Shown: positions 2,590-37,690, numbered from the stretch's first letter. The stretch: 64,000 nucleotides of DNA from IMGVR_UViG_3300045974_000132:62001-126000; one strand, 5' to 3'. Notes: generated from the sequence alone by a model not told the origin. Numbers and translations are program-made.

Positions 2590-3300
2590 TTAACGGTCAA
2601 AATAGGGTTTGTATTTAGGTGATCTTATTTTAATAATGTTGGTCGGGTACTCCCGACTTATATCAAAGAAGGATTTACCGTAACCTTTCTGCACTACACG
2701 GCTTTTATAACTAGTGCGTTCAACATTACCAAACCACTTGCTACTATCGCAACCTTTAGTCGAAGCACACAACCTACGATCTTGCATCATACCACCTGCA
2801 CCACCGTTGTACGAATTGAAGAAGAAGGCAGAATGCTCAACAGGATCAGGTGCACCTGCAATCTTTCCATATTCAAACTTATCACGTACAACTACTGCTA
2901 GTGCTTGCTTATCTGGATCATACCTTTTATCAAAAGACCAGTTAGCTAAATCTCGATCTAGCTTCCTAACATCATTGAAAGCGTTGAATCGTTCCTTACC
3001 GTTCTTGTCGTAAGCAACCGTTAGCTGGCCGAGGCCGAATCCATATTCCCTGCTTGTCTTTAATTCAACTGTTTCAGACCAGCAGTGGGGAGCTTTTAAA
3101 CTGACGCAGGTTTCTTGTTCTACTTGAGCCGAAATATACCAGGGAGTCTCATAAGTAGGCCACTTATCCGCAAGATGCTTTTTTAGCAGAGGTAGATTCT
3201 TTTCAGCGTGTATAGGAAGCTTAGGTAGAGCAGCAACTTGTTCTGCACTAAAAGCATTTGCTGTCAGGCAGATCGCTAATAGAGCAAGAAGAGATTTCAT
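2590..3300 (-). CDS. endolysin, SLT-type lytic transglycosylase with N-terminal signal peptide
   Basis: AQVEQET (catalytic Glu), GFGLGQLT, SYNGG. Probable start MKSLLALLAICLTANAFSA at 3300, ATGA-coupled to the upstream holin stop. Confidence 0.85.
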   Translation of the reverse strand: MKSLLALLAICLTANAFSAEQVAALPKLPIHAEKNLPLLKKHLADKWPTYETPWYISAQVEQETCVSLKAPHCWSETVELKTSREYGFGLGQLTVAYDKNGKERFNAFNDVRKLDRDLANWSFDKRYDPDKQALAVVVRDKFEYGKIAGAPDPVEHSAFFFNSYNGGAGGMMQDRRLCASTKGCDSSKWFGNVERTSYKSRVVQKGYGKSFFDISREYPTNIIKIRSPKYKPYFDR

Positions 3301-3641
3301 TTTAGACCGATCAGTTGAGAAGCCGTAAAGAACAAGGTGCACATGAAGAACACAATAGATGCGAATACTACCGCTGAAGCCATAGGGCTTGCTTTAGCAT
3401 TGACTGCTAGTTCATCAAGACCTATATGCGGAAAGAAAATCCGACGCATCAAATGCACACCGATACCGAATAGCGCGATAACACCGATGAAATAAATGAC
3501 AACCTGACTAGCATCCCACATGGGAATAAGGGCAAGTAGGGCTAGCAGCCCTAGAAACATATGACGGTAAACATCTTTACGAACTTTAGTACCGTTAATG
3601 CTTGTGCTGATGTGGGCAATTTCATCTTGGAAAAAAGACAT
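3297..3641 (-). CDS. putative holin (3 TM segments)
   Basis: 114 aa with three hydrophobic stretches; translationally coupled to the endolysin. Confidence 0.65.
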   Translation of the reverse strand: MSFFQDEIAHISTSINGTKVRKDVYRHMFLGLLALLALIPMWDASQVVIYFIGVIALFGIGVHLMRRIFFPHIGLDELAVNAKASPMASAVVFASIVFFMCTLFFTASQLIGLK

Positions 3642-3692: not shown

Positions 3693-3712
3693 GAATACTC
3701 ATTCTGCGGACG

Positions 3713-3748
3713 AAAAAATACCCAGTAAATCCGAAGACGTACTGGGTA
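3713..3748 (-). terminator. rho-independent terminator
   Basis: TACCCAGTA/TACTGGGTA 9-bp stem, loop containing cUUCGg, then TTTTTT on the minus strand. Confidence 0.85.
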
Positions 3749-3761
3749 GGGTAGAACAATA

Positions 3762-4694
3762 TTACTTGTAGGCAGAAGCAATGTATTGAGCTTTAATATG
3801 CGGTAATTCCCATCCCTCACTTGGGATGTAGATGAAAGGAACTTCAGCAGCCTGGAAGTCACCTAGTAATGTGTCTAAGTGAGCAATCTCATCCTTGAAC
3901 ATCTGATCGTGTGCAGCCCAATCTCCCTTTACATCCTTATCGTACTGCTTACAGGTACTTGTTTCACCCGTTTTGTCGTAGATGTATATGCAAGTAGAGG
4001 AAGTATTGAAGTAGGATAGCTGGCCTCGGACATAAGCAGCTTGGGCATTCAAAGATAGAATGTAGTCCTCATACACAGGAAGCTGCTCAGAGCAATGCAG
4101 TAGTGTAGCTGCACGATGGGTGAACAGAATAATACGATCAGGAGTAGAGTGCGTACCTAACTTCTGATTGACACGATCTACGCGATACCTTTGTTCAGGC
4201 AGAGAGTAGATGTTATACTGACGCTCAAACCAGGAGTACAGATGGACAAACTCTTCACCAAGCATGAGGTCAATCTTACTAGTATTAGGATAGACCAACT
4301 TATCAAGGATGTCATTCGTTTGAAGACCTAGGACGTCACACTTAGTACGACTTACTACCCGATTGATATGTTGTAAAGCACACGGATAGAGAAAGTCATC
4401 ACCGTCCATCAGCAGCAAGTAATCATATTCCTGGTAGTGTTCATTGAACAAGTCGAGAGAAGCATTCTTACCCTTACCTGGTTTACCATTGCTTACAGTG
4501 GCATGAAAGTCCCACGTAGGAAAAGCTTCAGATAAACTAGCTACTGACTCACGATATTCGTCTGAAAGGGTATTGCAATTAACAATACCCTTCCATTCTA
4601 CGCCAGGCACAGTTATATTATTTTCTACACTACGCATTAAACGAGTAAGCCTAGGTAGATCGCTAGATGTTAGCGCACAGACGACGATTTTCAT
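3762..4694 (-). CDS. GT-A fold glycosyltransferase (GT2-like)
   Basis: N-terminal beta strand MKIVVCALT, SNGKPGKGKN, YDYLLLMDGDDF (DxD), YED motif. Confidence 0.75.
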   Translation of the reverse strand: MKIVVCALTSSDLPRLTRLMRSVENNITVPGVEWKGIVNCNTLSDEYRESVASLSEAFPTWDFHATVSNGKPGKGKNASLDLFNEHYQEYDYLLLMDGDDFLYPCALQHINRVVSRTKCDVLGLQTNDILDKLVYPNTSKIDLMLGEEFVHLYSWFERQYNIYSLPEQRYRVDRVNQKLGTHSTPDRIILFTHRAATLLHCSEQLPVYEDYILSLNAQAAYVRGQLSYFNTSSTCIYIYDKTGETSTCKQYDKDVKGDWAAHDQMFKDEIAHLDTLLGDFQAAEVPFIYIPSEGWELPHIKAQYIASAYK

Positions 4695-4710
4695 TATGTA
4701 TCCTTATGTA

Positions 4711-5181
4711 TTACATACTGAAGGCTGGAAGAGTTTTTAAAGTAGCTTCAATAACAAAGTCTTTAGCCGTTGCAACTACTGCATCATATTGTGCCCAGCA
4801 CAGTGAACGCCACTTACGTAAGGCAAGAGCTTGTTGCTGGTATAGAGGAACAGCAGGCTCGTCAACGTAAGTAAGAGCTTCATCAATAGAGGTAAAGCCC
4901 AGAGACTTTGCTTGCTCATTTATATTTACAGTAATCTGCTGCTTTAAAGCAGCTTGCTTTTGTTCTAGGGTAGGACCAGGAGCTTCTACAAAGGGAGCTA
5001 TTGCACCGAAGTCACCGTTACAAGCACGTTGATATAGCTCTACACCGTGTTCTTCTACATCAGCCCCTTGAGCGATAAAAGGAACTTCTGAGGCAAGATG
5101 ATCAAATTTAACAGTCATCTTTATTGAACGGTTGGATGCTTCAATGTACAACGGATCTTTAACTGAAGAGTAAGTAAGCAT
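4711..5181 (-). CDS. tail fibre assembly chaperone-like protein
   Basis: VKFDHLASEVPFIA...DVEEHGVELYQRA..GDFGAI N-domain and AKSLGF.SI..ALTY...ALALRKWRSLCW C-domain, typical of Tfa-type chaperones; follows fibre genes. Confidence 0.7.
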   Translation of the reverse strand: MLTYSSVKDPLYIEASNRSIKMTVKFDHLASEVPFIAQGADVEEHGVELYQRACNGDFGAIAPFVEAPGPTLEQKQAALKQQITVNINEQAKSLGFTSIDEALTYVDEPAVPLYQQQALALRKWRSLCWAQYDAVVATAKDFVIEATLKTLPAFSM

Positions 5182-5193
5182 GAAAATAATCCT

Positions 5194-5742
5194 TTACGAA
5201 ACACGCTGCATCAATAAGCTACCGCCTGGTATGAAACCACGACATTGCCAAGTACCTGCCATAACGACAGGTGCTACAGACCACCACCAAGCATTGGAGT
5301 AGGTGCTAGTCACAAAGCTTGCAGAATTACCTACTTCATAAAGTGTGAAGTTTATATCTTTTGTTATTGCTACTAAATATGCACCGTACAATATAGAACC
5401 GAAAGTTAATGCTTGTGGGATATTATATTGAGCATTTGAAGAATCGTAAAATATATTATTGCCATTACCGTCATCTTGCCCAAAGACAGTAACAAATGAT
5501 CCGACTCCTCCGAAGCCTGCGGATGCTGCTCCGGCGGGCCCGGCTGGCCCAGTGGCTCCAGCGGGGCCTGTTGGTCCGACTGGGCCTTGGCTACCCGAAC
5601 CGCTACCCCCTGATCCTGCTGGTCCTTGTGGTCCAGTTGGACCCACGGGACCTACACTACCTGATCCACTTCCACTTGAGCCTAAAGCACTCAAGTCTAC
5701 TGATTTAGAAGTACCGTCTGAAAAGTCAATAATTAAAAACAT
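5194..5742 (-). CDS. short collagen-like fibre protein
   Basis: Gly-X-Y repeats; C-terminal GGVGSF...AGTWQCRG...LLMQRVS fibre-tip motif. Confidence 0.7.
   Translation of the reverse strand: MFLIIDFSDGTSKSVDLSALGSSGSGSGSVGPVGPTGPQGPAGSGGSGSGSQGPVGPTGPAGATGPAGPAGAASAGFGGVGSFVTVFGQDDGNGNNIFYDSSNAQYNIPQALTFGSILYGAYLVAITKDINFTLYEVGNSASFVTSTYSNAWWWSVAPVVMAGTWQCRGFIPGGSLLMQRVS
5530..5662 (-). repeat. collagen-like (GXY)n tract, GC-rich
   Basis: GPVGPTGPQGPAG and GPVGPTGPAGATGPAGPAG. Confidence 0.8.
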
Positions 5743-5758
5743 ATGCCTACCCCTCTGA

Positions 5759-6571
5759 TTATATAGTTGTTACAAAGGTACCCAAGTGCTGTCCGTACGC
5801 CGGATTGTACACAAAGGAACCATCAAAGTCAAAGTTAATAACATAACCAGTTTTAGTAGTAAGCCCTGTTAGATTTAAAGTGCCCAAGCCTGTACTTCCT
5901 ATCGCTACAGTACCGCTATAAACTGAGGCCCCTGTAGTAGCATTAGAAGCAGTCACCGTAACATTACTATTAGGAGGAGCTGTATAAATAGTTACTTTAA
6001 CAGAAGTTGCGGTAATATCTGCATTTGCAATTCCTAAAGAAGGCAGATAAGTAACGCCAGAATACGCTGTCACTGTAAAGGCTTTCGTTACCGTATTACC
6101 CGAACTATAGGTCTTTGATGAATCAAAAGTTGCAATGATCGTATAGCTACCTGCGGGTAACGCACTAGCTGAAATACTACCTGTGCCCGTGCCTGCTGAA
6201 TTTACAGTGAAGGAAGAAGAGTCAGCTACAGCACCTGAACTATTTTTAATAGTTATACCTATATTAGAGTTAGGAGGGGCCCCTGTAACATTCACACCTA
6301 AGGTCTGAGCAGTAGTAATGGCCGCTGAAGATAGTGTAACAGACGGTGTATAGGTAGAACTGCCTCCGCCGGAACCGCCTATGTCTGTTGCACTAAGTCT
6401 CAACCCTGTTATAGAAGCCCCGCCACTTGCTCCACCACCTGCTGCCCCTAAGTTTATGCTAGTACCGTCATTGAATGTAAGCGTTACAGTACCATTAGTT
6501 ACAGTGGCACCTGTTGCAATTTTGCCGTCAATCATTGACGGACTTACTTTAGTTAAACCACCCATAATCAA
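5759..6571 (-). CDS. Ser/Thr/Gly-rich virion fibre/appendage protein with two Ig-like repeats
   Basis: Repeated PS...APPNSN...GTGT/S...Y.I...FD.S units; N-terminal LTFNDGTSINLG resembles the start of the neighbouring fibre gene. Confidence 0.6.
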   Translation of the reverse strand: MIMGGLTKVSPSMIDGKIATGATVTNGTVTLTFNDGTSINLGAAGGGASGGASITGLRLSATDIGGSGGGSSTYTPSVTLSSAAITTAQTLGVNVTGAPPNSNIGITIKNSSGAVADSSSFTVNSAGTGTGSISASALPAGSYTIIATFDSSKTYSSGNTVTKAFTVTAYSGVTYLPSLGIANADITATSVKVTIYTAPPNSNVTVTASNATTGASVYSGTVAIGSTGLGTLNLTGLTTKTGYVINFDFDGSFVYNPAYGQHLGTFVTTI

Positions 6572-7617
6572 CTACTCCTGATATTTGATAAAGCCTGCGC
6601 GTAATGAGTTTCACACTGTCGGCAAGATGCACATTCCTTATTACAGGATAGCACATCACGCCAGTATGCTTCTGATAAATTAGAAATCTTCAATCCATCA
6701 TTAGCGGATACATTCAGAAATTCAGATAAGTCTTTATCCTCACCGTCTACGTAATGCTGGAGCATGTACTTGATGTTGGAACTACCTAAGTTACGTCCAG
6801 CTAACTTAATCTGGTCAATAAAAGGATAGTGCATTTCAAGTATCTCTTTAGTTAGAAACTGGCTAGTTAAGAACAACCAAGGAGTAAGCCTTGCTATATT
6901 TTCACATCCTATAACATGAATCTTATTCTGGCCGCTCTTAACATCGCTCAATGAGATTTCAACGTCACCGCTGTTCTTGTAGATGCAAGCATTGACACAA
7001 CCTTCATTCACCATCAGAATTAACTTACTAGCCAACTCTGGGTGCTTTGATAGATAGTGCTGAAGCTTTTTAGGATTACGATTTAGGTCGCGTTGAAGTA
7101 CCACACTATCTAAACACGCTGATCCGTACATCATCAAGAACATATCCAACTCTTGTAAGCTTGTATGGCTATTCGTACTCAATGAAACCAAGACAGCTTC
7201 ATTGATAAGCTTGGGTATTATCGTAACATCGGATACAGTTACGGCAAGCACAGGATAACGCTTACGGTAGAACTCAAGCTTATTTAAAATCTTAGCCCAG
7301 GACTCTTCTTTATAGAAGTCCGGACTATAAATATTGTTCATCAGCACTTTAACTGGAAGACCTGTAAAGGAGAGAATCTGATTTACAGCATTCTCCCAGT
7401 TAAGCACTGCTTGTGCATCCCTATTCCCATTAGGATATACAAATTGAGGAGCACGAATACCCCACACATCAATATCAGTATCTATATGACCTAATGGAAA
7501 GTACATACAGCTTATGTGATCCTTATATTTATTTATTGTGTCAATGAAACCGCTCAGAGTGCGCGGTGTAAAATGTACATTATTAGGAATAGGTACTTCT
7601 ATTTTCATTTGAGCCAC
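6568..7617 (-). CDS. peptidase-U32 family (Fe-S TIM-barrel, hydroxylase-like) protein
   Basis: VLQRDLNRN, LMVNEGCVNACIY, IKLAGR and C-terminal CNKECASCRQC. Confidence 0.7.
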   Translation of the reverse strand: MAQMKIEVPIPNNVHFTPRTLSGFIDTINKYKDHISCMYFPLGHIDTDIDVWGIRAPQFVYPNGNRDAQAVLNWENAVNQILSFTGLPVKVLMNNIYSPDFYKEESWAKILNKLEFYRKRYPVLAVTVSDVTIIPKLINEAVLVSLSTNSHTSLQELDMFLMMYGSACLDSVVLQRDLNRNPKKLQHYLSKHPELASKLILMVNEGCVNACIYKNSGDVEISLSDVKSGQNKIHVIGCENIARLTPWLFLTSQFLTKEILEMHYPFIDQIKLAGRNLGSSNIKYMLQHYVDGEDKDLSEFLNVSANDGLKISNLSEAYWRDVLSCNKECASCRQCETHYAQALSNIRSS

Positions 7618-8837
7618 GCCAACGTGTCGATGGATACAGAAGATGTACTGAAGAAGGAGAAGGGATACTTCTTATCAGCATCTGTTATACCAAAAGATAC
7701 ATTCTGTCCTCTGAAAACAACTTGGGTTTCAGCCCAGTTGTTTTCATCAAGCAACACTTTGGAATCTTTGAATACGCAGTTTGTACTACCTTTTAGCTTA
7801 ATAGTCTTGTTCCCTATATCGTCATACCTCGGAGTAAAAGGATAGCGAATCTGCATCTTAACAGGGATATCAACTTGCAAAGAGGAAGCATCATCCTTAA
7901 ATAGATTTGCTGTAAACCAAGTCTTTCCGTCATCAAAGGATACTTGTGGGAATAGTGTTTCATCTACATACAAGGTATCATTCTGAATACGGAAAAACGT
8001 CATTTCATCTGCAAAGGCTCTAATATACTCAGAGCGTTGCTGACGATCAGATAAGCCCATCATCTTGATACCATTTTGAAAACGATGCCACTTAATACCT
8101 GTGCCACCTATTCCACCGTAAGCAAAAGCTTCAAACTTATTGCCTACTACAACGAACGCATCTAATTCGCCTGCTTTAATACGAGCAAATACACTATGCC
8201 AAACTTCACGTTTCACATACCCTATACCTGCTGCAAACATTTCCATCAACAGATTTAGATAGTTTACACGATGGGCCGTAGCAAGAGGTATTACATAAGG
8301 GCTGCCGTCCCCTAAAGAAGGTAGATTAGATAAACCATATAGCGCATCTGCTACAGATGAACCCGAAATCTTTGCCAGTCTGTTATACACTGTACGATCC
8401 GGGTATCCTTCAAACACCCAATCGAATACAGCGTTCAACTCTTTATCAATCTCAGCCAACTCAGTATTGAACACCTCGTCATCTATAAAAGTATTAACAA
8501 AGTCAGCGGTACCGCTAAATTCAAAGGTACTTGAATACGGAAACACTGCAAGGATTCGGCTATTAACATAGTTTAGCATCCAGTCAAAGCTCATGCCGTG
8601 TCGCATAGTTTGATAGAAGTGCTTAACATTTGCCTCAGCTTCATTATCATTAACTAATTGGTCAAACTTAGCTAGAATAACTTTCGCTTTAGGCAGCGCT
8701 ACTTCCCACGAATCTAAGACGGAAGCTGCTTCCCAGATGTTTTTCATCAACTGGGTTGAGCTTCCGTCTGTAGCAGCATCCGTGATTGCCATTGAATAGC
8801 AACCCTCAACTACTTCAGACGGAGTCAACATAAACAT
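7605..8837 (-). CDS. hypothetical protein (410 aa)
   Basis: Long ORF overlapping the U32 start; no motif recognised. Confidence 0.6.
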   Translation of the reverse strand: MFMLTPSEVVEGCYSMAITDAATDGSSTQLMKNIWEAASVLDSWEVALPKAKVILAKFDQLVNDNEAEANVKHFYQTMRHGMSFDWMLNYVNSRILAVFPYSSTFEFSGTADFVNTFIDDEVFNTELAEIDKELNAVFDWVFEGYPDRTVYNRLAKISGSSVADALYGLSNLPSLGDGSPYVIPLATAHRVNYLNLLMEMFAAGIGYVKREVWHSVFARIKAGELDAFVVVGNKFEAFAYGGIGGTGIKWHRFQNGIKMMGLSDRQQRSEYIRAFADEMTFFRIQNDTLYVDETLFPQVSFDDGKTWFTANLFKDDASSLQVDIPVKMQIRYPFTPRYDDIGNKTIKLKGSTNCVFKDSKVLLDENNWAETQVVFRGQNVSFGITDADKKYPFSFFSTSSVSIDTLAWLK

Positions 8838-8850
8838 AGTAGTCTACCTT

Positions 8851-11800
8851 TTAAAGAATCGGAATAATATACGACAGTAGAGCTGCACCATCTTGGCCAT
8901 TACAGCCGGCCCCTAAACCAGATTCACCGCCGCCGTTACCGTAGCCTGTACCTGTACCACCGTTCCAAGAATTACCATGACCCGATGGAGGAACACCTGA
9001 GCCGTTAGAGCCACCCGCAAATGGCCCAGTATAGCCTTGTGCACCGTTAGGATGAACGCCGTTACCACCACCCGGTGAGCCACCTATACCGTTACCGAAT
9101 TGTGAACCAGGTGTGCCGCCCGTAGCTGCTACAAGCACGGTAGATCCGCGCATTACATATGTTGCACCACCTGCAGTACCTGTATCAAGACCTACAGCAG
9201 CCCCTGTGTCTGTGTAGTTGTAGCTGTAGTTGCTATTGAAGCGATACGAAGCACCAAAGCCGCGCTTGCCTACGATGATCGTAATCGTTTCACCTGGTGT
9301 TACAGTAAGAACAGTACCTAGCACTTTACCACCAGAACCACCACCGCCTCCTACCCAAGCATCGCCATTATTATTACAAGCACCTGACCCTGCACCGGCA
9401 CCGTATAAGCCGTCAACTGTAAGCGATGTTACGTTAGCTGGTATTACTAAGGAATACGTACCTGCTGTTGTATAAGCTACTTGCGTAGGAGTGGGCTGCA
9501 CAAGAATAGCTTCATTCATTGTTAGGTCGACTGCAATGTTTCCGCTTGCATCTGCTACAGTGGCTGTAACTGAGTAAGTCTGCCAAGTAAGAACGTTGGC
9601 TGTATCCTTAGACATATCTAGTGACCAGCTACCGCCGGCTGCAGTCAAAGGTGCACTAGCTAGATTACGCGTGTTCAAACTATTGGTTGTATCAAGAGCC
9701 TTAGTACCGTTTAGCGTATAGGACCAACCGTTGATTGAAACAGAGAACCCACCTGCTGCATCATTAGCTGGATATGTACCAATGATTATAGGTGTCGTAT
9801 TACCGTACGTATGCGTCGTAACTGTTGGTACTGAAGGAGGTGTATTATCGACTACCTTAGTAATTGAAATCTCATTAACTGAAGTATCAACATACGGTGC
9901 GGCTTCACCTACGTCAGCACTAGCAACTACATCGTGGAAGCCCAAGCTTAGTACAACCGAAGTCAAACTCAAGTCCAAGGACCAAGTATCATTCAAAGTA
10001 GACAGAGCAACAGAGCTACCCTTAGTAAAGGTCTGACCTTCAACCGTCACACTAAACGAATTAGCAAAGCGATACGGATACGTACCTGTTATAACCGGTT
10101 GTGCACTACCCGTAATCATTGTATTGACAGTAGGCTTGTTAGGAGTAACACCAGTACCACAATTCAATACTGATGATGCAGTAAAGTCTGTCCAGCAACA
10201 TGACTTGAACAAATCGTCATTCGAGATCATCGGATTGATAGAGCCATCCGGATTGATAGAGATTGCAGGGTAGATCGTATAACTAACAGGAATCTGAATA
10301 TTCTTAATCATCATTTCTGCTGGGAAGTAAGAATACCCAATAGTACCGCTTGTAATGCTAATCAATAGATTGCAATCACCCGTACTAGCATCAAAACTAT
10401 CTACTACAACTCCGAATGATAGATTCGCTGTGTAGGCAGCTGTTGAAGGATAATTACCATAAGCACCACCACGAACAGTAATCAACCATGCCGGCCATGC
10501 AATATCAGAGATACCTCCGTTAGCCTGCCAAGTCTTGTTGTAGACCATACACTTAATAATATCAGCATCATTATACTTCCACTGAGCATATAAGCGTGCA
10601 AAGTATTGAACATACCCAGGTGCGCCACCCGCATCAACCAAAGTCATGTATTCTGTATTGTGGTCTGCAACAACATACGGACGTTTCCACTTAACAGTGT
10701 AAGTGCTACCGCTAAACGCATCAACAATAACATGGGTGAAGGTGCGACTTTGTGTGCTATCACTGTCTACAGAAGATACGGACTGCGTATGGATGCTAGT
10801 ATTACCTAAAGTGAAACCACTTGGTAAGGTAACATGGTCACGCGACCAAATCATATCAAAGAAGTTGGTCAGTAGTGGAACACCTGAATACGTAGTGCCT
10901 TGAAGAGCATTCGGATAGTTAATATAAATACCCGTATCATACGTAATCATAGGTATAGATGCGCGAGATAAAGCTTCGTAGGTCATTGCACCAAGATTGA
11001 TGTTATCAATGAAATACTTTTTACCTTGCTCATACTTGTGAATCGTAAAGGTTGCATCGCCCAGTTCTTGCTTAAGGAATACTTCCAGATACTTATAGAC
11101 GTTGAACGTCATTTTAGCACCTAGGGTAGCACCTGATCCAACTCCTGCATAAGCCGCTGTTGGTAAAACTTGCATAGTCAGAGCTTTAGTTACAGGCTGT
11201 AGACCGTATTTATTTGCAAGATTCTGGTCACTTTGGCTGCCGTTATTGAAGTCCAGCTTCATACTACCTGTTACCAGAGCAAGCAACTTGGTAATAGGAC
11301 AAGCCAGCATATCACGTAAGCGATAGCTCAAGTTCGGCCAATCTACATACGGGCCATTACGTGGCATATACTGAGTAGAGCCATCTTCACGCAGTAACAA
11401 ACGTGTCAAGGGAGGGCCACTAACAAAATACACACTACCTAAGTGTAGATCATAGTAGTCAATAGGCAGCGGTGTAGCATACTGAACTTCTTGAATATAG
11501 TCAGCTTCAACTACCTTATACGTAGGCTTTAGCTGATAGACAGAGCTAAGGAACACAAGAGTATTCTCTTTGCGCTCAACCTTGTTCGTTATGGGATAGT
11601 GGTTTACAGAGCCCGTTGTATTGAAATCAACGTACATTTCTGTACGCCATCCGGCATGAGGTATCGTCTTAAAGTACCAAATTTCGGCAGCTTGCCCTGC
11701 TACTACTTCTTGCAAGTTCAAAGTAGTGTTGCCGCTTACGTAGTAGCTACCCTTATGTTGATAAGCACCGCCTATTGCAATAAAGATTGAATTTTCATCA

Positions 11801-13806
11801 TCGACAGTAGGTATCGTGTAAGTCAAGCTTGCAGTAGTGGTGAAGTCATAGACCTCACATAGAGTTGATCTACCTGCATCTTCTACATCCGTAAAGCAAA
11901 TGAAGTCGATCTTTACACCGAATGGTATAGCTTCCAAGATAGTCAATGTACCGAAAGCTGCACCCTTATTACCCGCAACATAGATATGATTACGTGGGTC
12001 CTGCCATGCTCCACCTGCAAGCATGATGATGTTGGACTTACGCGGTACGTTATAGACAGGATACACTGTCCGAGCACCGTCTGATGTATAGCTCATTGTT
12101 TTGGGTACTAGCTTATTAGGCGTACCCATTCGACCAGCAGGGTCAACCCACTCCGGTCCAGTATTAGTACCGCTTACCGTAGCTGTTATCGAGCTATCTA
12201 CTACCGTGAAGGTAGTAATATCAATAATGGATGTACCATTAGGATATAGAGGAGTCTTAAGGAGAGTTACAACACCCGCGTCAATAGTAAAGTCTGTTTC
12301 AAGGTAGTAGCTACCGTCAACATAGACTATGGTACGAGTAGCATCGAACATTGAAGGATCAACATTGAATGCCAGAGGCTGCCCAACTGTAGCTTGGTAG
12401 AAGTATCTCTTCAACGTTGTGTAGGAAACGTCATCCTCATACGTAGCAAAGCACACAATCTTCAAAGTTCCTACAGTAGGCGGGCTACTGAACAGAACAG
12501 AGGTTGGCTCCATCGTATAATCTGATTTGGGGATATACATATTATCAATGTATAGTTCAACCCACGCCGTATCGTCTGGAACAATAGGCAAGTAATAACG
12601 AGCAGTTATTCCGTCTGTAGGATACGTAGATTCAAACTTAGCCAGCATCCCACCTACGGCAACAACTGTAGGGATGAACGCATATACATCTACAGCTTTG
12701 CCGGCAAAGGTAGGAGCCAGCACTTCATTAGCTGCTACAGAATAGTTGCTGAAAGGGATGCACTTACCTTCTACGAAGACATACGTATCAATCTCAGTAG
12801 CACCCAGAATAGCGGGATCAGCAAACATGCCTAAAGAGTCGAAAGTGCCGCTTGCAACATGTGCAACATACTTTGTTTTATTTATTACTTGTTCTACCCG
12901 AGTCCAATCATTTAGGCCTACACCTAATACAAGGTAGTCTTCCAAGTCGGCTGTACGTGCAGGTAGTTGATTCTTTAAGCTGCGCCAGATTGAAACTGTA
13001 GAAGAAGATGCGATTGACTGCCATGCTTTATCAACAGTGGTAAAGGTATTGTTTGCCTTATTGAATGTTAACTTACGCGAGAAGCCGTCACCTACGCCAC
13101 CAACAACTTGGCAGATAACAGTTTCATTATCATTCAACCAAAAGCCACCCTTATCTGGATTTAAAGAGAAGGTAGTAGAGTCAACAATCGAATCAAGGCT
13201 CCCTTTATAGATACGATTGTAGCCTACGAAGGCCCATTGATTACCACCTGGCCCTGACTTGACAGCGATACTTGCAGAAGAAGCATCTAGGTAGTCATTG
13301 ACGTTTTCATCAAGGACAATAACTGCATTCTGATAGGAGTGTTGAGGCTGTGCTAGAGTTCGTACAAAAGGTGTAGCCGGAAGACTATTGTTGTTTGACA
13401 CAACAACATTGATAACATCACCTAAACGATTTGCTACAACTAGCAAATAGATAGTAATGGCATACTCGGAAGTCTTCTCATAAACAGGAACTAGCGGCCC
13501 ATAAGCAAAAAGCTCGCCGCTAGCTAGATATACACCGATTTCACGTAACTGCCACATGCCTGCTTTAGGCAGACTAGCTGGGACTGTTAGTGTAAGACGA
13601 ACAGAAGCAGTATCTACAACCTCAATAGCTGTAACTTGGGCTTGATAGACAGGAACACCCAGCATACCTAAAGCACTAATAGTATCAGTTTTAGATAAAC
13701 CGGATATATCGTACTCAGATACTTTGAAATCGGTTAGGTCTATTAAGAAGCCACCTTGCTCTGCATTTGCAATGGCCGCTAAACCTATGTCGGTTACTGA
13801 TAGCAT
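8851..13806 (-). CDS. large tail fibre / baseplate-attached receptor-binding protein
   Basis: N-terminal tail-collar attachment domain (VTDIGLAA...WQLREIGVY), multiple V.V.G.Y.....Y beta repeats, two P.ITGTYP Ig-like repeats, Gly-rich C-terminal domain. Confidence 0.8.
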   Translation of the reverse strand: MLSVTDIGLAAIANAEQGGFLIDLTDFKVSEYDISGLSKTDTISALGMLGVPVYQAQVTAIEVVDTASVRLTLTVPASLPKAGMWQLREIGVYLASGELFAYGPLVPVYEKTSEYAITIYLLVVANRLGDVINVVVSNNNSLPATPFVRTLAQPQHSYQNAVIVLDENVNDYLDASSASIAVKSGPGGNQWAFVGYNRIYKGSLDSIVDSTTFSLNPDKGGFWLNDNETVICQVVGGVGDGFSRKLTFNKANNTFTTVDKAWQSIASSSTVSIWRSLKNQLPARTADLEDYLVLGVGLNDWTRVEQVINKTKYVAHVASGTFDSLGMFADPAILGATEIDTYVFVEGKCIPFSNYSVAANEVLAPTFAGKAVDVYAFIPTVVAVGGMLAKFESTYPTDGITARYYLPIVPDDTAWVELYIDNMYIPKSDYTMEPTSVLFSSPPTVGTLKIVCFATYEDDVSYTTLKRYFYQATVGQPLAFNVDPSMFDATRTIVYVDGSYYLETDFTIDAGVVTLLKTPLYPNGTSIIDITTFTVVDSSITATVSGTNTGPEWVDPAGRMGTPNKLVPKTMSYTSDGARTVYPVYNVPRKSNIIMLAGGAWQDPRNHIYVAGNKGAAFGTLTILEAIPFGVKIDFICFTDVEDAGRSTLCEVYDFTTTASLTYTIPTVDDENSIFIAIGGAYQHKGSYYVSGNTTLNLQEVVAGQAAEIWYFKTIPHAGWRTEMYVDFNTTGSVNHYPITNKVERKENTLVFLSSVYQLKPTYKVVEADYIQEVQYATPLPIDYYDLHLGSVYFVSGPPLTRLLLREDGSTQYMPRNGPYVDWPNLSYRLRDMLACPITKLLALVTGSMKLDFNNGSQSDQNLANKYGLQPVTKALTMQVLPTAAYAGVGSGATLGAKMTFNVYKYLEVFLKQELGDATFTIHKYEQGKKYFIDNINLGAMTYEALSRASIPMITYDTGIYINYPNALQGTTYSGVPLLTNFFDMIWSRDHVTLPSGFTLGNTSIHTQSVSSVDSDSTQSRTFTHVIVDAFSGSTYTVKWKRPYVVADHNTEYMTLVDAGGAPGYVQYFARLYAQWKYNDADIIKCMVYNKTWQANGGISDIAWPAWLITVRGGAYGNYPSTAAYTANLSFGVVVDSFDASTGDCNLLISITSGTIGYSYFPAEMMIKNIQIPVSYTIYPAISINPDGSINPMISNDDLFKSCCWTDFTASSVLNCGTGVTPNKPTVNTMITGSAQPVITGTYPYRFANSFSVTVEGQTFTKGSSVALSTLNDTWSLDLSLTSVVLSLGFHDVVASADVGEAAPYVDTSVNEISITKVVDNTPPSVPTVTTHTYGNTTPIIIGTYPANDAAGGFSVSINGWSYTLNGTKALDTTNSLNTRNLASAPLTAAGGSWSLDMSKDTANVLTWQTYSVTATVADASGNIAVDLTMNEAILVQPTPTQVAYTTAGTYSLVIPANVTSLTVDGLYGAGAGSGACNNNGDAWVGGGGGSGGKVLGTVLTVTPGETITIIVGKRGFGASYRFNSNYSYNYTDTGAAVGLDTGTAGGATYVMRGSTVLVAATGGTPGSQFGNGIGGSPGGGNGVHPNGAQGYTGPFAGGSNGSGVPPSGHGNSWNGGTGTGYGNGGGESGLGAGCNGQDGAALLSYIIPIL

Positions 13807-33805: not shown

Positions 33806-34903
33806 TCATATTCTCTTGCCCTTAGCAACAGAGCGCGAGTTAGCCAGCGTGAAGCTGAGAACTTCGCTCATGAGCCAGCCGCGAGCGGTAGAGCCGCTGT
33901 CAGCACCCGAAGTAGGTTCGCTACGAACACCACCACGATCACTGTACATAGCGTGATGTTCCGGGGTCGACAGAACGTAGATTTCGCCACGATTCAGGAC
34001 CTTCTGGTTCGGTTGGCGGAAGCCGTCCGTCAGAAGAGTCAGACCAACCAGAGTACCGAGTTCGCCGTTCAGGACCAAGTCATACTTGGTGACCGGATCA
34101 AGGAATGACGAGAAATCGTTGTTGCCGATAATGTCGTTCCAGTAATCGTTAGCGATGATCGCAGTGGTGGCCGGCAGGTTCCAGTCAGTGATGGCGGTAC
34201 GCAGATTGGCAAGCAATTGCGGCGTCAGTTGACCAGCGATGTAGTTAAGCGGATTGACAACGCCAACGGTCAAGTCAGCAGATTGCTTCCACAGCTTATC
34301 TTCCTTGACCATGATTGCGTCAAGACCCATGTTGTACAGGTTGTCAAGCGTGTCGCCGCCAACTTGTTCCATTTCGATACGATCAGCGCGCAGATTTGCC
34401 ACGACTTCAAATTCAGCCGGGTAGAACTGCTTGTTACGAATCATTTGGAACTGTACGTTTGCAGGGCCAGTAGCAACAACAGCCATTGCATCCCACATCG
34501 GGACGTTAACGCGCGGCAGTTCGCCTTGCTTCAGAGTCTGACCAACAGCAACGCGACGGAGGAAGCCTTCGCGGTTACGTTGTTCTTGAATCTGAACAGC
34601 CAGATCGGCGCCCAGAGCAGCCCACTTGACCGGATCAGCAGCAGCAGCGATCATAACTTCGCGGCGCTCTTGAGCCAGTTGCATTTGTTCTTCAGCAGAA
34701 GTAGATTGATGACGGATGTCACCCTTTTCCATTGCAGAGAACATGCCAGTAATGGCGCGAATCAGTTCTTTCTTGTCGTTTGCGTTGAACTCACCAGTCG
34801 AGGTCGACAGGAGACGTTCAGCAGTGCCAGGCATACGGAACTCAGTAACCGGGGCGCCGCTAGCAAGCACAACTTGGGAACCAGCGTACGGATTTGCTTT
34901 CAT
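33806..34903 (-). CDS. major capsid protein (HK97 fold, probable N-terminal propeptide)
   Basis: Size, position after scaffold and decoration genes, strong high-expression codon bias; REGFLRR, AIMVKED, GELGTLVG. Confidence 0.85.
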   Translation of the reverse strand: MKANPYAGSQVVLASGAPVTEFRMPGTAERLLSTSTGEFNANDKKELIRAITGMFSAMEKGDIRHQSTSAEEQMQLAQERREVMIAAAADPVKWAALGADLAVQIQEQRNREGFLRRVAVGQTLKQGELPRVNVPMWDAMAVVATGPANVQFQMIRNKQFYPAEFEVVANLRADRIEMEQVGGDTLDNLYNMGLDAIMVKEDKLWKQSADLTVGVVNPLNYIAGQLTPQLLANLRTAITDWNLPATTAIIANDYWNDIIGNNDFSSFLDPVTKYDLVLNGELGTLVGLTLLTDGFRQPNQKVLNRGEIYVLSTPEHHAMYSDRGGVRSEPTSGADSGSTARGWLMSEVLSFTLANSRSVAKGKRI

Positions 34904-34945
34904 AATGTAAAACTCCTATTGCTTGTAAGATGTACCGGCCTACGA

Positions 34946-35641
34946 TTAGCCGACGTTGATTTCAACAACCAGGAACGGCGAACCGGCTGAAGGGCTGTCC
35001 TTAACAGTCAAGCCCGGAATAGCCTTGTCTGAAGGGCCAGTAGACGGGCCAAGCTTACCACCAGCCAGGAGCTTTGCGAACAGGGCCGTAGACCAGTCCG
35101 CAGAAGCGTCGAAGAAGGAAGTAGCAACTTCCGCTTGCTTGATAGCAGCGATAGTGCCGAGAGCGTTTGCGGCCAGACCACCGTAAGGAGCATCACCGAT
35201 AACGGTACGAGCTTCTTGGACAGTAGGAGCATACAGGTATTGAGCATGGATAGCTTTGCCTGCATTGGAAGCATCAAGAACGTAGTTGGCGCCAACCAGA
35301 ACTACTTCACCAGCAGTCGGGGTACCCGAAGCGATGATAGCTAGAGCAACACCACCGACGGTGATCAGAGCTTGACCAGCGATAGGAGCGCGAGTAAGCG
35401 AACCTGTAGCTGAAGCATCGACGACGCCATCTTCAACCAGCGGCAGAGTAGCCGGTGGCATGTTACGAGCAAGTGCGAAACCTGCAAAGACTTCACCGGC
35501 AGCACCAGTGGAGGGTTGAACCTTGGTTGAACCGGCTTCTTTGACGAAAGCCAGAGCAATACCTTCTTCTTGAATAGCCACGCCGGTAGCGAGGTTTTCA
35601 AAAAGAGATTTAAAAATACGAGTATTCCGAAGTTGCAGCAT
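34946..35641 (-). CDS. capsid decoration / stabilising protein
   Basis: Ala/Gly/Val-rich, between scaffold and capsid genes, same codon bias. Confidence 0.6.
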   Translation of the reverse strand: MLQLRNTRIFKSLFENLATGVAIQEEGIALAFVKEAGSTKVQPSTGAAGEVFAGFALARNMPPATLPLVEDGVVDASATGSLTRAPIAGQALITVGGVALAIIASGTPTAGEVVLVGANYVLDASNAGKAIHAQYLYAPTVQEARTVIGDAPYGGLAANALGTIAAIKQAEVATSFFDASADWSTALFAKLLAGGKLGPSTGPSDKAIPGLTVKDSPSAGSPFLVVEINVG

Positions 35642-35666
35642 GGTTTAAACTCCTTGTTAATTACTC

Positions 35667-37574
35667 TTACCGAGCGCGACGGCCGAGAGAGGAAACAGCA
35701 CGATGGATTTTTTGCATACCTACAGTATCTTCAGTAGAGACAGACACCTCAGTATTTGCACCGGGCTTCTGCTCAGTCGAAACAGAAGTACCCATGCCTG
35801 CTAAACGGCTCTCGATGGAATCAGAAGGTTGTGCAGAAGAAACCGCCTGATAGTTTGTACCGAGAATAGTCTTTGCGAGGCTTTCTTGCACTTCAGAAGG
35901 CTTACTAACAATGTCATTTGCTTGAGCAAACAGCACTGAGTGATAAGCATCTGCGTGTGCCTTGAACGCATTGTCGATAACGACTTCCGGATTACGTACG
36001 CCGGCACTCGACATTGCATTCCAAAGAGCGGACTTGAGAGGATTCTGGACGCCAGCAAAGAAGCCACGGTTGATACCGATAGCAGCAGTTGCCATAGCAG
36101 CCATAAACTTCTCTTGATGGCCCTTAATTTCAGCAGAAAGAGCAGCACGTTGTTCGGAGACTTGCGAATCCACTAAACGGCGAACTTCCTTAGAGACAGA
36201 AACCTTATGCTTGATCGGAGCAAAGCCGAGTTCAGCAAGAGCCTTCTTGATACCCGAGACCTTAGCGGTTGCCAGAGCAGCATGACCGAAAGACGGAGTA
36301 TCGAAAATATCAGCATTCTTACCAGCAGTAGCAGCGCGTGCCATTGCAATAGGAACACCCTTGTGGTATGCAGTCCAAGCAGCACAACCAGCAACCGTAG
36401 AGCTATAGCTTACGTCGAGGTCATCAGCAGAGGCACTTTCATCCAAGTCAGAATCAGCCGCGATTTCTTCGGTATCTTCACCGAGTTCATCACCTTCATC
36501 TTCAGAGCTATCATCGAGAACTGACAAAGCATTACCCTCATCTTCTTCATCTTCAGAAGCGTCATCCGATTCATCATCGCCGGAAGTTGATTTATCTGCA
36601 TCGCTAGATTCAGCAGCAGCAGCGTCTTCCTCACCAGCATCTTCAGAACCTTCATCTTCTTCAGCAGCGCCTTCGTCTGTGCCTTCTTCAGCAGCAGCAT
36701 CGTCGCCTTCGCCTTCATCTTCAGTAGAAGCATCTTCAACGTTGTCACCAGGAACTTCACCGTCGCCCAGGTCTTCTGACTTAGAGACAGTAACCTTAGT
36801 AGCGACAGCTTCTTCAACCGGCTTTTCGCTGAGGTCGATTTCACCAGCAACATCTTCAGAAGGTTCTTGAACTTCGCTCAAGCAAATCGGGCACTCTGAA
36901 ACGTTCTTATCCGAAAGGATGTGAACACCGCAGCCAGCAGAACTACATACAACGTACTGGGTCTTAACCTTAGTACCGCTGGACATAGAAGACAGCTTTT
37001 TGTGGGCAGAGAAAACGCGCATAGCTTCCTTGAATGAAGAAGAAACAACTACTGAAGAGTCTTCGTCTTCGTCGTCTTCTGCATCATCTTCTTCCGAAGA
37101 ATCGTCATCTTCTTCCTCGTCATCTGATTCATCATCATCTGATTCGGAAGCAATGTCTTCATCTTCGTCGGTATCTACATCACCCAGGTCATCTTCATCT
37201 TCATCACCGTCACATTCAGTGGCTAGAGCAGAAGTGCACTGCGGGCAATACTTAACCAGGGATTCACTGTCAAACACAACGTGGGCACCGCAACCAGACG
37301 AGCAAACCAGGTGGTTCGCTTCGATGTCCGCGCTGGAATTAGAAGCGAATTCCAGGGTATCGAGAATTTGGTTATCAGTTTCCAGGTCCATGTCACCAGT
37401 GCTTGGATTGAACATCTGTTCAGCATGACTGGCATGTGTAACGAAGGCTAACTTCCCATCATTACTCACTTGTGCAACCGCGCCCTTGCCCATGGCGAGC
37501 AACCGATACTTATTAATAGCATCGGTTTTAGAACGGCCCACTGCCAGGATGCCGTGAAATTCAGCTTTAGGCAT
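35667..37574 (-). CDS. prohead scaffold/core protein, acidic, with two Zn-finger-like motifs
   Basis: Long D/E tracts; CSS.GCG.H...CP.C twice; probable start MPKAEF at 37574 with AGGAG RBS. Confidence 0.65.
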   Translation of the reverse strand: MPKAEFHGILAVGRSKTDAINKYRLLAMGKGAVAQVSNDGKLAFVTHASHAEQMFNPSTGDMDLETDNQILDTLEFASNSSADIEANHLVCSSGCGAHVVFDSESLVKYCPQCTSALATECDGDEDEDDLGDVDTDEDEDIASESDDDESDDEEEDDDSSEEDDAEDDEDEDSSVVVSSSFKEAMRVFSAHKKLSSMSSGTKVKTQYVVCSSAGCGVHILSDKNVSECPICLSEVQEPSEDVAGEIDLSEKPVEEAVATKVTVSKSEDLGDGEVPGDNVEDASTEDEGEGDDAAAEEGTDEGAAEEDEGSEDAGEEDAAAAESSDADKSTSGDDESDDASEDEEDEGNALSVLDDSSEDEGDELGEDTEEIAADSDLDESASADDLDVSYSSTVAGCAAWTAYHKGVPIAMARAATAGKNADIFDTPSFGHAALATAKVSGIKKALAELGFAPIKHKVSVSKEVRRLVDSQVSEQRAALSAEIKGHQEKFMAAMATAAIGINRGFFAGVQNPLKSALWNAMSSAGVRNPEVVIDNAFKAHADAYHSVLFAQANDIVSKPSEVQESLAKTILGTNYQAVSSAQPSDSIESRLAGMGTSVSTEQKPGANTEVSVSTEDTVGMQKIHRAVSSLGRRAR

Positions 37575-37690
37575 ACTTTTGGCTCCTGTTAATTGTTGAA
37601 ACGAACGTGCAATTTCAAACACGTACAAATAAATTATGGTATTCAGAAATTGCGCTAGACCTACAAAACCTACAAACTACCAATCTACTA

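What the first reader, a model, noticed from the sequence alone, without database searches (positions are those of the whole stretch)
3762..8837. Enzyme genes interleaved with fibre genes: possible virion-fibre modification cassette (U32 Fe-S enzyme plus glycosyltransferase)
Seen: one apparent operon reads large fibre, 410-aa unknown, U32-family protein, Ser/Thr-rich Ig-like protein, collagen-like fibre, chaperone, GT-A glycosyltransferase, terminator; the unknown, U32 and Ig-like genes overlap. Established: characterised U32 proteins (TrhP, RlhA, UbiU/V) are Fe-S, O2-independent hydroxylation factors rather than proteases, and GPT collagen repeats of Bacillus BclA are O-glycosylated. Inference: the phage hydroxylates and/or glycosylates its own fibres. 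Caveat: Pro here sits in the X position, so animal-type 4-Hyp is not implied.
Basis: partly seen in the sequence, partly recalled or inferred. Interest (0 to 1): 0.62.

Follow-up and report, generated by a model that had tools for sequence, protein, structure and literature searches.

The report
Two enzyme modules beside phage tail-fibre genes
In a 286-kb pond jumbo phage, one late operon mixes tail-fibre genes with two unrelated accessory enzymes, a cysteine-rich U32-like barrel protein and a glycosyltransferase; each stays next to fibre genes in many other phages, so fibre modification is plausible but unproven.

Summary
On the minus strand, 13806-3762 is one tightly packed operon: long fibre, 410-aa unknown (p410), U32-like protein, Ser/Thr-rich Ig-like protein, short collagen-like protein, small fibre-related protein, GT-A glycosyltransferase. 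A terminator hairpin follows.

The "U32" gene is only a remote relative. It has the U32 TIM-barrel fold but no Pfam match, and it lacks the CX6CX15CX3C motif. Instead it has seven invariant cysteines (C-X3-C...C, then C-X3-C-X2-C-X2-C).

The cassette is two independent modules, not one:
- **Module A:** long fibre, p410, U32-like. It recurs in all 9 contigs where context could be read. Distant relatives sit in tail-fibre regions of T4-like cyanophages, fused to a methyltransferase. In anaerobic bacteria they are fused to radical-SAM enzymes.
- **Module B:** collagen-like fibre, small gene, GT. It recurs in this lineage and in 47 of 80 marine viral loci, where the middle gene is DUF6445.

The two enzymes co-occur in only two loci, and cross-searches were 0 of 5 in each direction.

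Fibre modification is the best reading (about 0.4) but is untested. The rivals are host-envelope modification and small-molecule or RNA chemistry.

The parts
8851..13806 (-). Long tail fibre (1651 aa), first gene of module A
   Evidence: PF12571 tail-collar fibre N-terminus (E 1.1e-6) and PF21722 Gly-rich domain at residues 1446-1646. Homologues precede p410 and the U32-like gene in L001, L006-L009, L012 and L013. Only about the last 210 residues diverge from L012 and L013, as expected of a receptor-binding tip.
7605..8837 (-). p410: conserved partner of the U32-like protein, function unknown
   Evidence: No Pfam, PHROG or NCBIfam hit. AF2 model has pLDDT 90: a helical domain at about 1-225 with no structural match, then Ig-like sandwiches (best Z 7.7, residues 295-405). 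Homologues at 33-74% identity lie immediately upstream of every close U32-like gene.
6568..7608 (-). U32-like TIM-barrel protein with seven invariant Cys, putative Fe-S enzyme (ATG start at 7608; alternative GTG at 7617)
   Evidence: AF2 model has pLDDT 90. Top structural hit by both aligners is U32 Mk0906, 5d88 (Foldseek E 2.8e-5; VIA Z 14.3, rmsd 3.4, 221 residues aligned). Profile against PDB puts 5d88 first at E 0.012. ESM Atlas gives 0.96 to a PF01136 cluster. C207, C211, C238, C325, C329, C332 and C335 are invariant across phage and bacterial relatives. No Pfam hit for the protein itself.
5759..6571 (-). Ser/Thr-rich Ig-like protein (270 aa), candidate fibre or decoration protein
   Evidence: 31% Ser+Thr, no Cys. 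Sub-threshold FlgD_ig, DUF3244 and MG2 hits. A homologue is present only in L001.
5194..5742 (-). Short collagen-like fibre protein (182 aa), first gene of module B
   Evidence: GXY runs at residues 28-48 and 50-73. PHROG tail-fibre and collagen-like minor tail families. Thr is the commonest Y residue across the four collagen-like proteins of this lineage taken together (24 of 57 triplets; 3 of 13 in coll182 itself).
4711..5181 (-). 156-aa fibre-related protein, possible assembly factor
   Evidence: N-terminus matches phrog_1795 and phrog_1141, 'tail fiber protein' (E 1e-13 and 8e-12). No Pfam hit. Homologues lie between the collagen-like gene and the GT in L015 and after the collagen-like gene in L001.
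3762..4694 (-). GT-A (GT2-like) glycosyltransferase, last gene of the operon
   Evidence: Glyco_tranf_2_3 at E 1.6e-4, below cut-off. Homologues carry PF00535. D97-G-D-D100 is invariant. Profile hits the GT-A domains of TarS (5tze, 1e-6) and TarP (6h1j, 1.5e-5).
3711..3748 (-). Intrinsic terminator closing the operon
   Evidence: Hairpin of -16.3 kcal/mol, z -3.47, followed by a U-run. Holin (3297-3641) and endolysin (2590-3342) follow.

Best explanation
The region is the 3' half of a late tail-fibre operon that carries two separable accessory-enzyme modules. Module A is the long fibre, then p410, then a cytoplasmic U32-fold protein. The seven invariant cysteines of that protein probably hold two Fe-S centres: a 3-Cys site in the barrel and a C-terminal 4-Cys site. 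Its gene is translationally coupled to p410, and the two proteins probably work as a pair on the long fibre or on p410 while fibres assemble. By analogy with U32 oxidases, and given the methyltransferase fusions, the chemistry would be an oxidative modification such as O2-independent hydroxylation. Module B is a short collagen-like fibre with GPT/GAT triplets, a small fibre-related protein, and a GT-A glycosyltransferase. I infer that this GT O-glycosylates the collagen-like protein, the Ser/Thr-rich fibre protein, or both. Shown here: gene order, co-transcription signals, folds, conserved residues and conserved neighbourhoods. Inferred: Fe-S binding, the p410/U32-like complex, the substrates, and every chemical step.
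For: One operon with gaps of 16 nt or less, an ATGA overlap and a single terminator. Every close U32-like gene follows a p410 homologue: six contigs seen with gene context (L001, L006-L009, L012; 38-67% identity), the 3-kb L002, and two shared contigs, of 6,923 and 27,655 bp. A long fibre gene lies upstream in the six with enough context. Complex prediction for p410 with the U32-like protein gave weak support: score 0.57, best control 0.00. That mark was reached by 58 of 80 solved complexes and 2 of 110 mismatched pairs, but at 0.60 or under by only 7 of those 80 and by both mismatches. The runs agree in at least 96% of contacts and the partner's pLDDT is at least 88. Distant family members with the same seven Cys lie in tail-fibre regions of a viral contig (L004) and of Prochlorococcus phage P-HM2, fused to a Methyltransf_24 domain. 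Bacterial members are fused to radical-SAM/SPASM and HemN/HutW-like enzymes. This fits a redox enzyme whose product is processed further. For the GT: window collagen-chap-GT; L015 collagen-chap-GT; L013 p410-GT-collagen; L014 tail-repeat protein-396 aa-GT. In 47 of 80 IMG/VR loci (12 of 29 clusters at 90% identity) a 900-1400-aa collagen-like fibre is followed by DUF6445 and then the GT. The RP31 homologue is absent from that phage's 32-protein virion proteome, which fits a non-structural enzyme (PMC5468394 supplement). Precedents exist: mycobacteriophage virion glycosylation (Freeman 2023, as cited in PMC12619734) and Mimivirus collagen hydroxylase/glycosyltransferase (PMC9546862, PMC5802723).
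Against: There are no proteomic, glycan or expression data, and no RNA run holds the locus. The U32-like protein lacks the U32 Pfam signature and the CX6CX15CX3C motif (PMC11574389). All characterised U32 oxidases act on RNA or quinones, none on proteins. The 47 marine GT loci fall into one single-linkage cluster at 70% identity, so the collagen-GT link rests on about two lineages and could be inherited synteny. L001 has the collagen-like gene without the GT, and L012 has the GT without it. A DUF401/CitMHS-like transporter gene accompanies the U32-like gene in several phages, which hints at a small-molecule substrate. Tail-fibre regions are known dumping grounds for accessory genes, and GTs there have been read as host O-chain modifiers (PMC7029224).
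Confidence: 0.4

Rival explanations
1. Host-envelope modification. The GT, and perhaps the U32-like enzyme, alters LPS, capsule or the receptor of the infected cell. This would block superinfection or stop progeny adsorbing to debris. The genes sit in the fibre region only because it is a hypervariable slot for accessory genes.
For: Published reading for GTs in the tail-fibre hypervariable region of pelagimyophages (PMC7029224). The closest solved GT-A relatives are the wall-teichoic-acid enzymes TarS and phage-encoded TarP. The GT lies at the module boundary next to holin and endolysin in the window, L012 and L015.
Against: The GT is the last gene of a late structural operon, so it is expressed when envelope remodelling has little time to act. 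It keeps the same neighbour type, a collagen-like fibre, at about 30% identity. The PDB hits cover only the generic nucleotide-binding half of the GT (query positions 2-124).
Confidence: 0.25
2. The U32-like protein is an auxiliary metabolic or nucleic-acid enzyme, such as an RNA or quinone-type hydroxylase like TrhP, RlhA or UbiU/V, or a step in a small-molecule pathway. Its position beside fibre genes would have no functional meaning.
For: All characterised U32 oxidases act on RNA or ubiquinone precursors (PMC11574389, PMC10990095). A DUF401/CitMHS-like transporter gene is adjacent in RP31, L004 and L005, close by in L006, and elsewhere in G000 and G001. Bacterial relatives lie in multi-radical-SAM clusters.
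Against: Pairing with p410, which carries Ig-like domains, was seen in all 9 contigs, with start/stop overlap. Fibre-region placement recurs in cyanophages at about 17% identity. The genes are co-transcribed late.
Confidence: 0.15
3. p410 and the U32-like barrel are virion components: a fibre-tip adaptor carrying a TIM-barrel enzyme, depolymerase-like, that acts on the host surface at adsorption.
For: They occupy the position after the fibre gene where adhesins and tip proteins usually lie. p410 has Ig-like domains. GH18 and other glycosidase barrels are the next-best structural hits (Z 12.5-10).
Against: U32 Mk0906, not a glycosidase, is the top hit by both aligners. Seven invariant Cys point to an oxygen-sensitive metal centre. 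The fusion partners are intracellular radical-SAM and methyltransferase enzymes. The RP31 homologue was not found in virions. p410 is moderately conserved rather than hypervariable.
Confidence: 0.08
4. The U32-like protein is a true peptidase of the 'collagenase' PrtC type that trims or matures fibre proteins.
For: This is the historical annotation of U32. JGI labels two relatives 'collagenase-like PrtC'. A collagen-like gene lies nearby.
Against: Most carriers have no collagen-like gene nearby. The invariant residues are cysteines in Fe-S-like spacing. The fusions are to radical-SAM enzymes and methyltransferases.
Confidence: 0.05

Closest known systems
U32 'peptidase' family and U32 oxidases (Mk0906/5D88; UbiU/UbiV, TrhP, RlhA)
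   Same: (beta/alpha)8 barrel, with 5d88 as top hit by Foldseek and VIA-align. Conserved cysteines directly after a barrel strand ('NEGC'). One distant member passes PF01136. Language-model features sit nearest to PF01136 clusters.
   Different: No PF01136 match for the phage clade. Seven invariant Cys in C-X3-C...C plus C-X3-C-X2-C-X2-C spacing, instead of CX6CX15CX3C. No detectable profile similarity to E. coli UbiU or UbiV. Its context is tail-fibre genes rather than RNA or quinone pathways.
T4-like cyanophage gene cluster T4-GC354 (e.g. P-HM2 PHM2_101) and PHROGs 1458 and 36869
   Same: Same seven-Cys barrel family. Located among tail-fibre genes, with a Ser-rich 'sericin-like' protein nearby. 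Annotated only as hypothetical.
   Different: Fused to a Methyltransf_24 domain. About 17% identity. No p410 homolog detected (tested on the gene just upstream of the U32-like gene in L004 and RP31). Followed by a DUF401-like membrane protein in L004 and L005.
Virion glycosylation systems: mycobacteriophage capsid and tail-tube glycosylation; Mimivirus collagen lysyl hydroxylase/glycosyltransferase L230; Bacillus BclA GPT-repeat O-glycosylation
   Same: A virus-encoded GT placed among structural genes. A collagen-like substrate candidate with Thr at the Y position. In the marine relatives a second small enzyme-like gene (DUF6445) sits between the collagen gene and the GT, echoing the hydroxylase-plus-GT logic.
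   Different: No glycan has been shown. This GT is not detectably related to those enzymes beyond the GT-A fold. The target would be tail fibres, not capsid or tail tube. The BclA comparison rests on my own knowledge.
Wall-teichoic-acid GT-A enzymes TarS and TarP
   Same: Best solved sequence relatives of the GT's N-terminal GT-A domain, and a DxD motif.
   Different: The match covers only about the first 120 residues, at E 1e-6 to 1e-5. The C-terminal half is unrelated. The acceptor cannot be inferred.

Membership tests
Peptidase_U32 / U32 oxidases (PF01136, IPR001539) | Sequence match to the PF01136 model above its gathering score | tested here: not met
   No PF01136 hit for the window protein even at E up to 10. 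Of 27 family members, only the most distant (P0037) passes: 25.8 bits against a cut-off of 22.4. No hit in the whole phage genome.
Peptidase_U32 / U32 oxidases (PF01136, IPR001539) | [quoted passage not shown] | tested here: met
   5d88 is the top hit by Foldseek (E 2.8e-5, TM 0.47/0.63) and by VIA-align wide (Z 14.3, rmsd 3.4, 221 of 247 residues; next hit Z 12.5). It is also the best profile-to-PDB sequence hit, at E 0.012.
Peptidase_U32 / U32 oxidases (PF01136, IPR001539) | Four conserved Cys in a CX6CX15CX3C motif that ligate a [4Fe-4S] cluster (PMC11574389) | tested here: not met
   The invariant Cys are C207-X3-C211, C238, and C325-X3-C329-X2-C332-X2-C335. The spacing and the number (seven) both differ.
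Peptidase_U32 / U32 oxidases (PF01136, IPR001539) | Fe-S cluster binding and prephenate-dependent, O2-independent hydroxylation | not testable with these tools
   Needs anaerobic purification, spectroscopy and activity assays.
GT-A fold family-2 glycosyltransferases | Match to GT2 Pfam models (PF00535, PF13641) | tested here: inconclusive
   The window protein scores 22.2 bits against a cut-off of 27. Homologues P0053, P0055, P0068 and P0069 carry PF00535 or PF13641. The relative in L016 passes PF00535 with 34.7 bits against 23.3.
GT-A fold family-2 glycosyltransferases | DxD metal and nucleotide-sugar binding motif | tested here: met
   D97-G98-D99-D100 is invariant in 23 sequences.
Bacterial and phage collagen-like triple-helix proteins (BclA/Scl type) | Uninterrupted Gly-X-Y repeats long enough to form a triple helix | tested here: inconclusive
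   Two runs of 7 and 8 triplets. Pfam Collagen at E 0.015, below cut-off. PHROG collagen-like and tail-fibre families at 5e-11 to 1e-5.
Tail-fibre assembly chaperones (Tfa / gpG / gpU type), for the 156-aa protein | Sequence match to a tail-fibre assembly family | tested here: not met
   No Pfam family at E up to 10. Its PHROG matches are families annotated 'tail fiber protein' and cover the N-terminus only. The chaperone role remains a guess from gene position.
Virus-encoded virion-glycosylation systems | Glycan covalently attached to a virion protein, dependent on the viral GT | not testable with these tools
   Only the gene neighbourhood is available.

The most novel reading that the evidence does not exclude
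The seven-Cys U32-like proteins would be a new branch of Fe-S oxidases that act on proteins. They would install an oxygen-independent hydroxyl-type mark on phage tail fibres, with p410 as the docking partner. The mark would then be methylated (cyanophage methyltransferase fusions) or glycosylated (this phage and L012). This would be a hidden layer of fibre chemistry shared by jumbo phages and abundant marine cyanophages.
Probability: 0.15. Interest if true: 0.85.

Novelty: new variant of a known kind. Interest (0 to 1): 0.6.

Why it matters
Tail fibres set host range, yet their post-translational chemistry is almost unexplored.

This work defines an uncharacterised seven-Cys, U32-fold family. 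It has 930 representative clusters at E 0.001 or better, and 126 cultured phage records, mostly cyanophages, carry it as 'hypothetical'. Its phage members sit beside fibre genes in most lineages examined (jumbo phage RP31 is an exception: its neighbours are unannotated). If it modifies fibres, it would be the first protein-directed U32-type enzyme.

The conserved trio of collagen-like fibre, DUF6445 and GT in marine phages, and the related trio here, give directly testable candidates for virion fibre glycosylation outside mycobacteriophages and giant viruses.

Cultured carriers (P-HM2, Syn19, S-RIM2, RP31) make the U32-like question testable by mass spectrometry and knock-outs; the GT family was found only in uncultured phages, so it needs heterologous expression.

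Tried and rejected
**Searches that found nothing**
- Megablast of the region and tblastn of the U32-like protein and of the GT against 50,697 cultured phage records gave no match. The close clade is known only from metagenomes.
- NCBIfam found nothing useful for any cassette protein.
- phmmer of the U32-like protein against PDB gave only noise.
- hhalign of the family profile against single E. coli UbiU and UbiV sequences showed no similarity. This test has low power.
- A PDB sequence search with the DUF6445 profile gave no hit, and no paper mentions DUF6445. Its 2OG-oxygenase character is therefore unconfirmed.

**p410**
- Foldseek PDB, VIA-align wide and both ESM Atlas searches matched only generic Ig-like domains. 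The helical N-domain has no match.
- p410 was also compared with the ORFs upstream of the distant U32-like genes in L004 and RP31. No relation was found.

**Ideas I rejected**
- That the 184/198-aa gene in the marine loci is a homologue of the 156-aa window protein. An HMM search found nothing; that gene is DUF6445.
- That the two enzymes form one co-inherited system. Cross-searches gave 0 of 5 each way, with positive controls of 4 of 4 and 3 of 3.

**Other notes**
- The search for related loci with the very diverse alignment A5 failed for lack of a conserved stretch, so the bacterial subset A6 was used instead.
- The sigma-70 promoter scan found fewer sites than the shuffles did and is uninformative.
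- Read laying was not used, because no RNA run holds the locus.


Full report
**Setting**

The window is bases 62001-126000 of a 286,393-bp IMG/VR virus record. The record has direct terminal repeats and is rated 100% complete. Its DNA is found in pond and freshwater-sediment metagenomes, and no RNA run holds it.

All genes of the finding are on the minus strand. Upstream are baseplate genes: a gp25-like 135-aa protein, then 574-aa and 223-aa proteins. Downstream of the terminator are a holin and an endolysin.

**Observation**

- long fibre, 8851-13806
- p410, 7605-8837
- U32-like protein, 6568-7608 or 7617
- Ser/Thr-rich Ig-like protein, 5759-6571
- collagen-like protein, 5194-5742
- 156-aa protein, 4711-5181
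- GT, 3762-4694

Gaps are 16 nt or less. The p410 stop and the U32-like start share ATGA. The only convincing terminator follows the GT: -16.3 kcal/mol, z -3.5, then a U-run. So this is one late structural operon.

**The U32-like protein**

Pfam, NCBIfam and PDB sequence searches of the single protein found nothing. Thirty-six relatives were found by word search. An AF2 model from their alignment has pLDDT 90.

Five lines point to the U32 fold:
- 5d88, the U32 protein Mk0906, is the top hit of Foldseek (E 2.8e-5) and of the Foldseek-independent VIA-align search. The VIA hit has Z 14.3, rmsd 3.4 and 221 aligned residues; the next hit, a GH18 barrel, has Z 12.5.
- The family profile's best PDB hit is the same chain, at E 0.012.
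- The ESM Atlas feature search gives 0.96 to a cluster in which 63% of members carry PF01136.
- One distant member passes PF01136.
- BFVD's top hit is a phage 'Peptidase' at E 1e-9.

It is not a canonical member, however. The CX6CX15CX3C motif that defines U32 oxidases (PMC11574389) is replaced by seven invariant cysteines: C207-X3-C211, C238, and C325-X3-C329-X2-C332-X2-C335. N94, R180, N204, E205, K271, G274 and R275 are also invariant. All are conserved down to 16-23% identity.

A 3-Cys plus 4-Cys arrangement suggests two metal centres, one of them with an open coordination site. This is inference.

**Family breadth**

An exhaustive profile search found 930 representative clusters at E 0.001 or better, and 341 at 1e-10 or better.

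Many distant members are fusions:
- radical-SAM/SPASM (AslB- or PapB-like) plus the U32-like domain
- the U32-like domain plus a HemN/HutW-like radical-SAM domain
- triple fusions

These occur in chromosomes of mostly anaerobic bacteria, such as Anaerolineae, Desulfobacterales, Acidobacteriota and Bacteroidales. There they lie in clusters with three to five radical-SAM genes, a WD40 protein and small ORFs.

In phages, a U32-like plus Methyltransf_24 fusion (phrog_1458, T4-GC354, annotated 'hypothetical') is present in 123 cyanophage records. A stand-alone form is present in three Ralstonia jumbo-phage records.

**Module A**

Every close homologue whose context could be read follows a p410 homologue:
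- L001, L006, L007, L008, L009 and L012, at 38-67% identity
- the 3-kb contig L002
- two further shared contigs, of 6,923 and 27,655 bp

In L001, L006-L009 and L012 a homologue of the long fibre lies upstream. What follows the U32-like gene varies: the Ig-like and collagen-like genes only in the window and L001, the GT in L012, a solute-binding protein in L009, and unrelated genes elsewhere. p410 also occurs without the U32-like gene, followed directly by the GT, in L013.

p410 folds confidently (pLDDT 90). It has a helical N-domain with no structural match and Ig-like C-terminal sandwiches.

Complex prediction gave weak support only. The score was 0.57, with a best control of 0.00. That mark was reached by 58 of 80 solved complexes and 2 of 110 mismatched pairs, but at 0.60 or under by only 7 of those 80 and by both mismatches. 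The runs agree in at least 96% of contacts, and the partner's pLDDT is at least 88.

Distant relatives are again among fibre genes. In L004 the fusion lies between a 1968-aa and a 296-aa protein, both carrying the S74 fibre-chaperone domain. In P-HM2 it lies a few genes after a 3677-aa tail fibre and a 'sericin-like' Ser-rich protein.

In RP31 the homologue (ORF136) is not among the 32 proteins identified in virions, whereas ORF133 nearby is. This is weak evidence for a non-structural enzyme.

**Module B**

The GT has an invariant DGDD motif and a GT-A N-domain related to TarS and TarP.

Close relatives show these arrangements:
- L012: fibre, p410, U32-like, GT, holin, lysin
- L013: fibre, p410, GT, collagen-like
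- L015: collagen-like, chap-like, GT, holin, lysin
- L014: a 719-aa protein with faint phage-tail-repeat hits, a 396-aa protein, GT

IMG/VR holds 147 more distant relatives at 27-43% identity. In 47 of the best 80 loci, a collagen-like ORF ends 570-600 bp upstream of the GT, with a single 184- or 198-aa gene between them. Where complete, that ORF is 900-1400 aa, with GXY runs of up to 640 residues.

That middle gene is DUF6445 (E 3e-14). It carries a conserved 'HHD...YYHRS' pattern reminiscent of 2OG/Fe(II) oxygenases. The oxygenase reading comes from the motif and from my memory of the Pfam clan. It was not confirmed here.

After dereplication, the 47 loci form 12 clusters at 90% identity but only one single-linkage cluster at 70%. 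So the collagen-GT association is seen in about two deep lineages.

In the window's lineage, Thr is the commonest Y residue of the triplets (24 of 57), as in GPT-type repeats. In the marine lineage, Gln dominates at 54%.

**Independence of the two enzymes**

They share a locus only in the window and L012. None of the 80 marine GT loci has a U32-like gene nearby.

Genome-level profile searches agree:
- No GT of this family in five U32-like carriers, two of which are complete genomes.
- No U32-like gene in five GT carriers, which are 38-83% complete.
- The positive controls worked: 4 of 4 and 3 of 3.

**Interpretation**

The best-supported reading is two juxtaposed fibre-accessory modules. Late co-transcription, translational coupling and neighbourhood conservation across deep divergence favour action on fibre proteins. 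So do the fusion partners (methyltransferase, radical-SAM peptide-maturase-like enzymes) and the known precedents for virion glycosylation and viral collagen modification.

But nothing here shows a modification. The chemistry is borrowed from a family whose defining motif this protein lacks. There are also serious rivals:
- Host-envelope modification by the GT (PMC7029224).
- Small-molecule or RNA chemistry for the U32-like enzyme, a view strengthened by the recurrent DUF401 transporter neighbour.

I put fibre modification at about 0.4 overall. It is somewhat higher for the GT than for the U32-like enzyme.

**Novelty**

Virion glycosylation and U32 Fe-S oxidases are both known kinds. What is new is a distinct seven-Cys U32-like family tied to phage fibre genes, and a conserved collagen-fibre/GT arrangement. 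I found no paper linking U32 to phage fibres or virions.

Noticed in passing
L096 10016-11056 (RP31 ORF135); L004 11611-12480; L005 11596-12468; L006 11915-12955; own genome G000:C1:146102-147076 (outside the window): A DUF401/CitMHS-like membrane (transporter-type) gene accompanies the U32-like gene. It is directly downstream in RP31, L004 and L005, two genes away in L006, and elsewhere in the genome in this phage and in G001. This may point to an imported small-molecule substrate or co-substrate. The base rate of DUF401 in phages was not measured.
   Followed up: partly
L016 4342-8891 and 46 further IMG/VR loci (L017-L084): Marine viral contigs carry a conserved trio: a giant collagen-like fibre (complete copies 900-1400 aa), a DUF6445 protein (184 or 198 aa, with an HHD...H motif) and a GT2 glycosyltransferase, often downstream of a baseplate gene homologous to the window's 574-aa protein. 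It looks like a hydroxylase-plus-glycosyltransferase pair for a collagen-like fibre. The DUF6445 fold was not verified.
   Followed up: partly
L097 7992-9731 (Prochlorococcus phage P-HM2 PHM2_101); 123 cyanophage records: T4-like cyanophages encode the seven-Cys U32-like domain fused to a Methyltransf_24 domain (T4-GC354, annotated hypothetical). It lies inside the tail-fibre region, next to a 'sericin-like' Ser-rich protein.
   Followed up: partly
L179 1884-11792; L180 2923-9379; L181 5294-11732: Bacterial relatives of the U32-like domain are fused to radical-SAM domains. They sit in conserved clusters of three to five radical-SAM genes with a WD40 propeller and small ORFs of 56-147 aa, mostly in anaerobes. 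The pathway is uncharacterised.
   Followed up: partly
window 5194-5742 and 5759-6571: The collagen-like and Ig-like proteins both begin with a short strand containing 'DGTS', followed by a Gly/Ser-rich linker (FSDGTSKSVDL and FNDGTSINL). This is conserved in L001 and loosely in L013. It may be a shared docking motif.
   Followed up: partly
window 2590-3641: A lysis cassette lies directly after the operon terminator: a holin-like 114-aa protein (phrog_8226) whose gene overlaps the start of a 250-aa endolysin-like gene. The same GT-holin-lysin order occurs in L012 and L015.
   Followed up: partly
window 34001-36000: A local G+C peak of 0.515, against about 0.43 elsewhere in the window. It overlaps ORFs at 33806-34903, 34946-35641 and 35667-37628.
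   Followed up: no
L001 8169-8759; L009 7226-8520 and 9762-9992: Some relatives have extra small ORFs inserted between the fibre gene and p410, or between p410 and the U32-like gene (196 aa in L001; 290, 141 and 76 aa in L009). The L001 one has no family match; the L009 ones were not searched.
   Followed up: no
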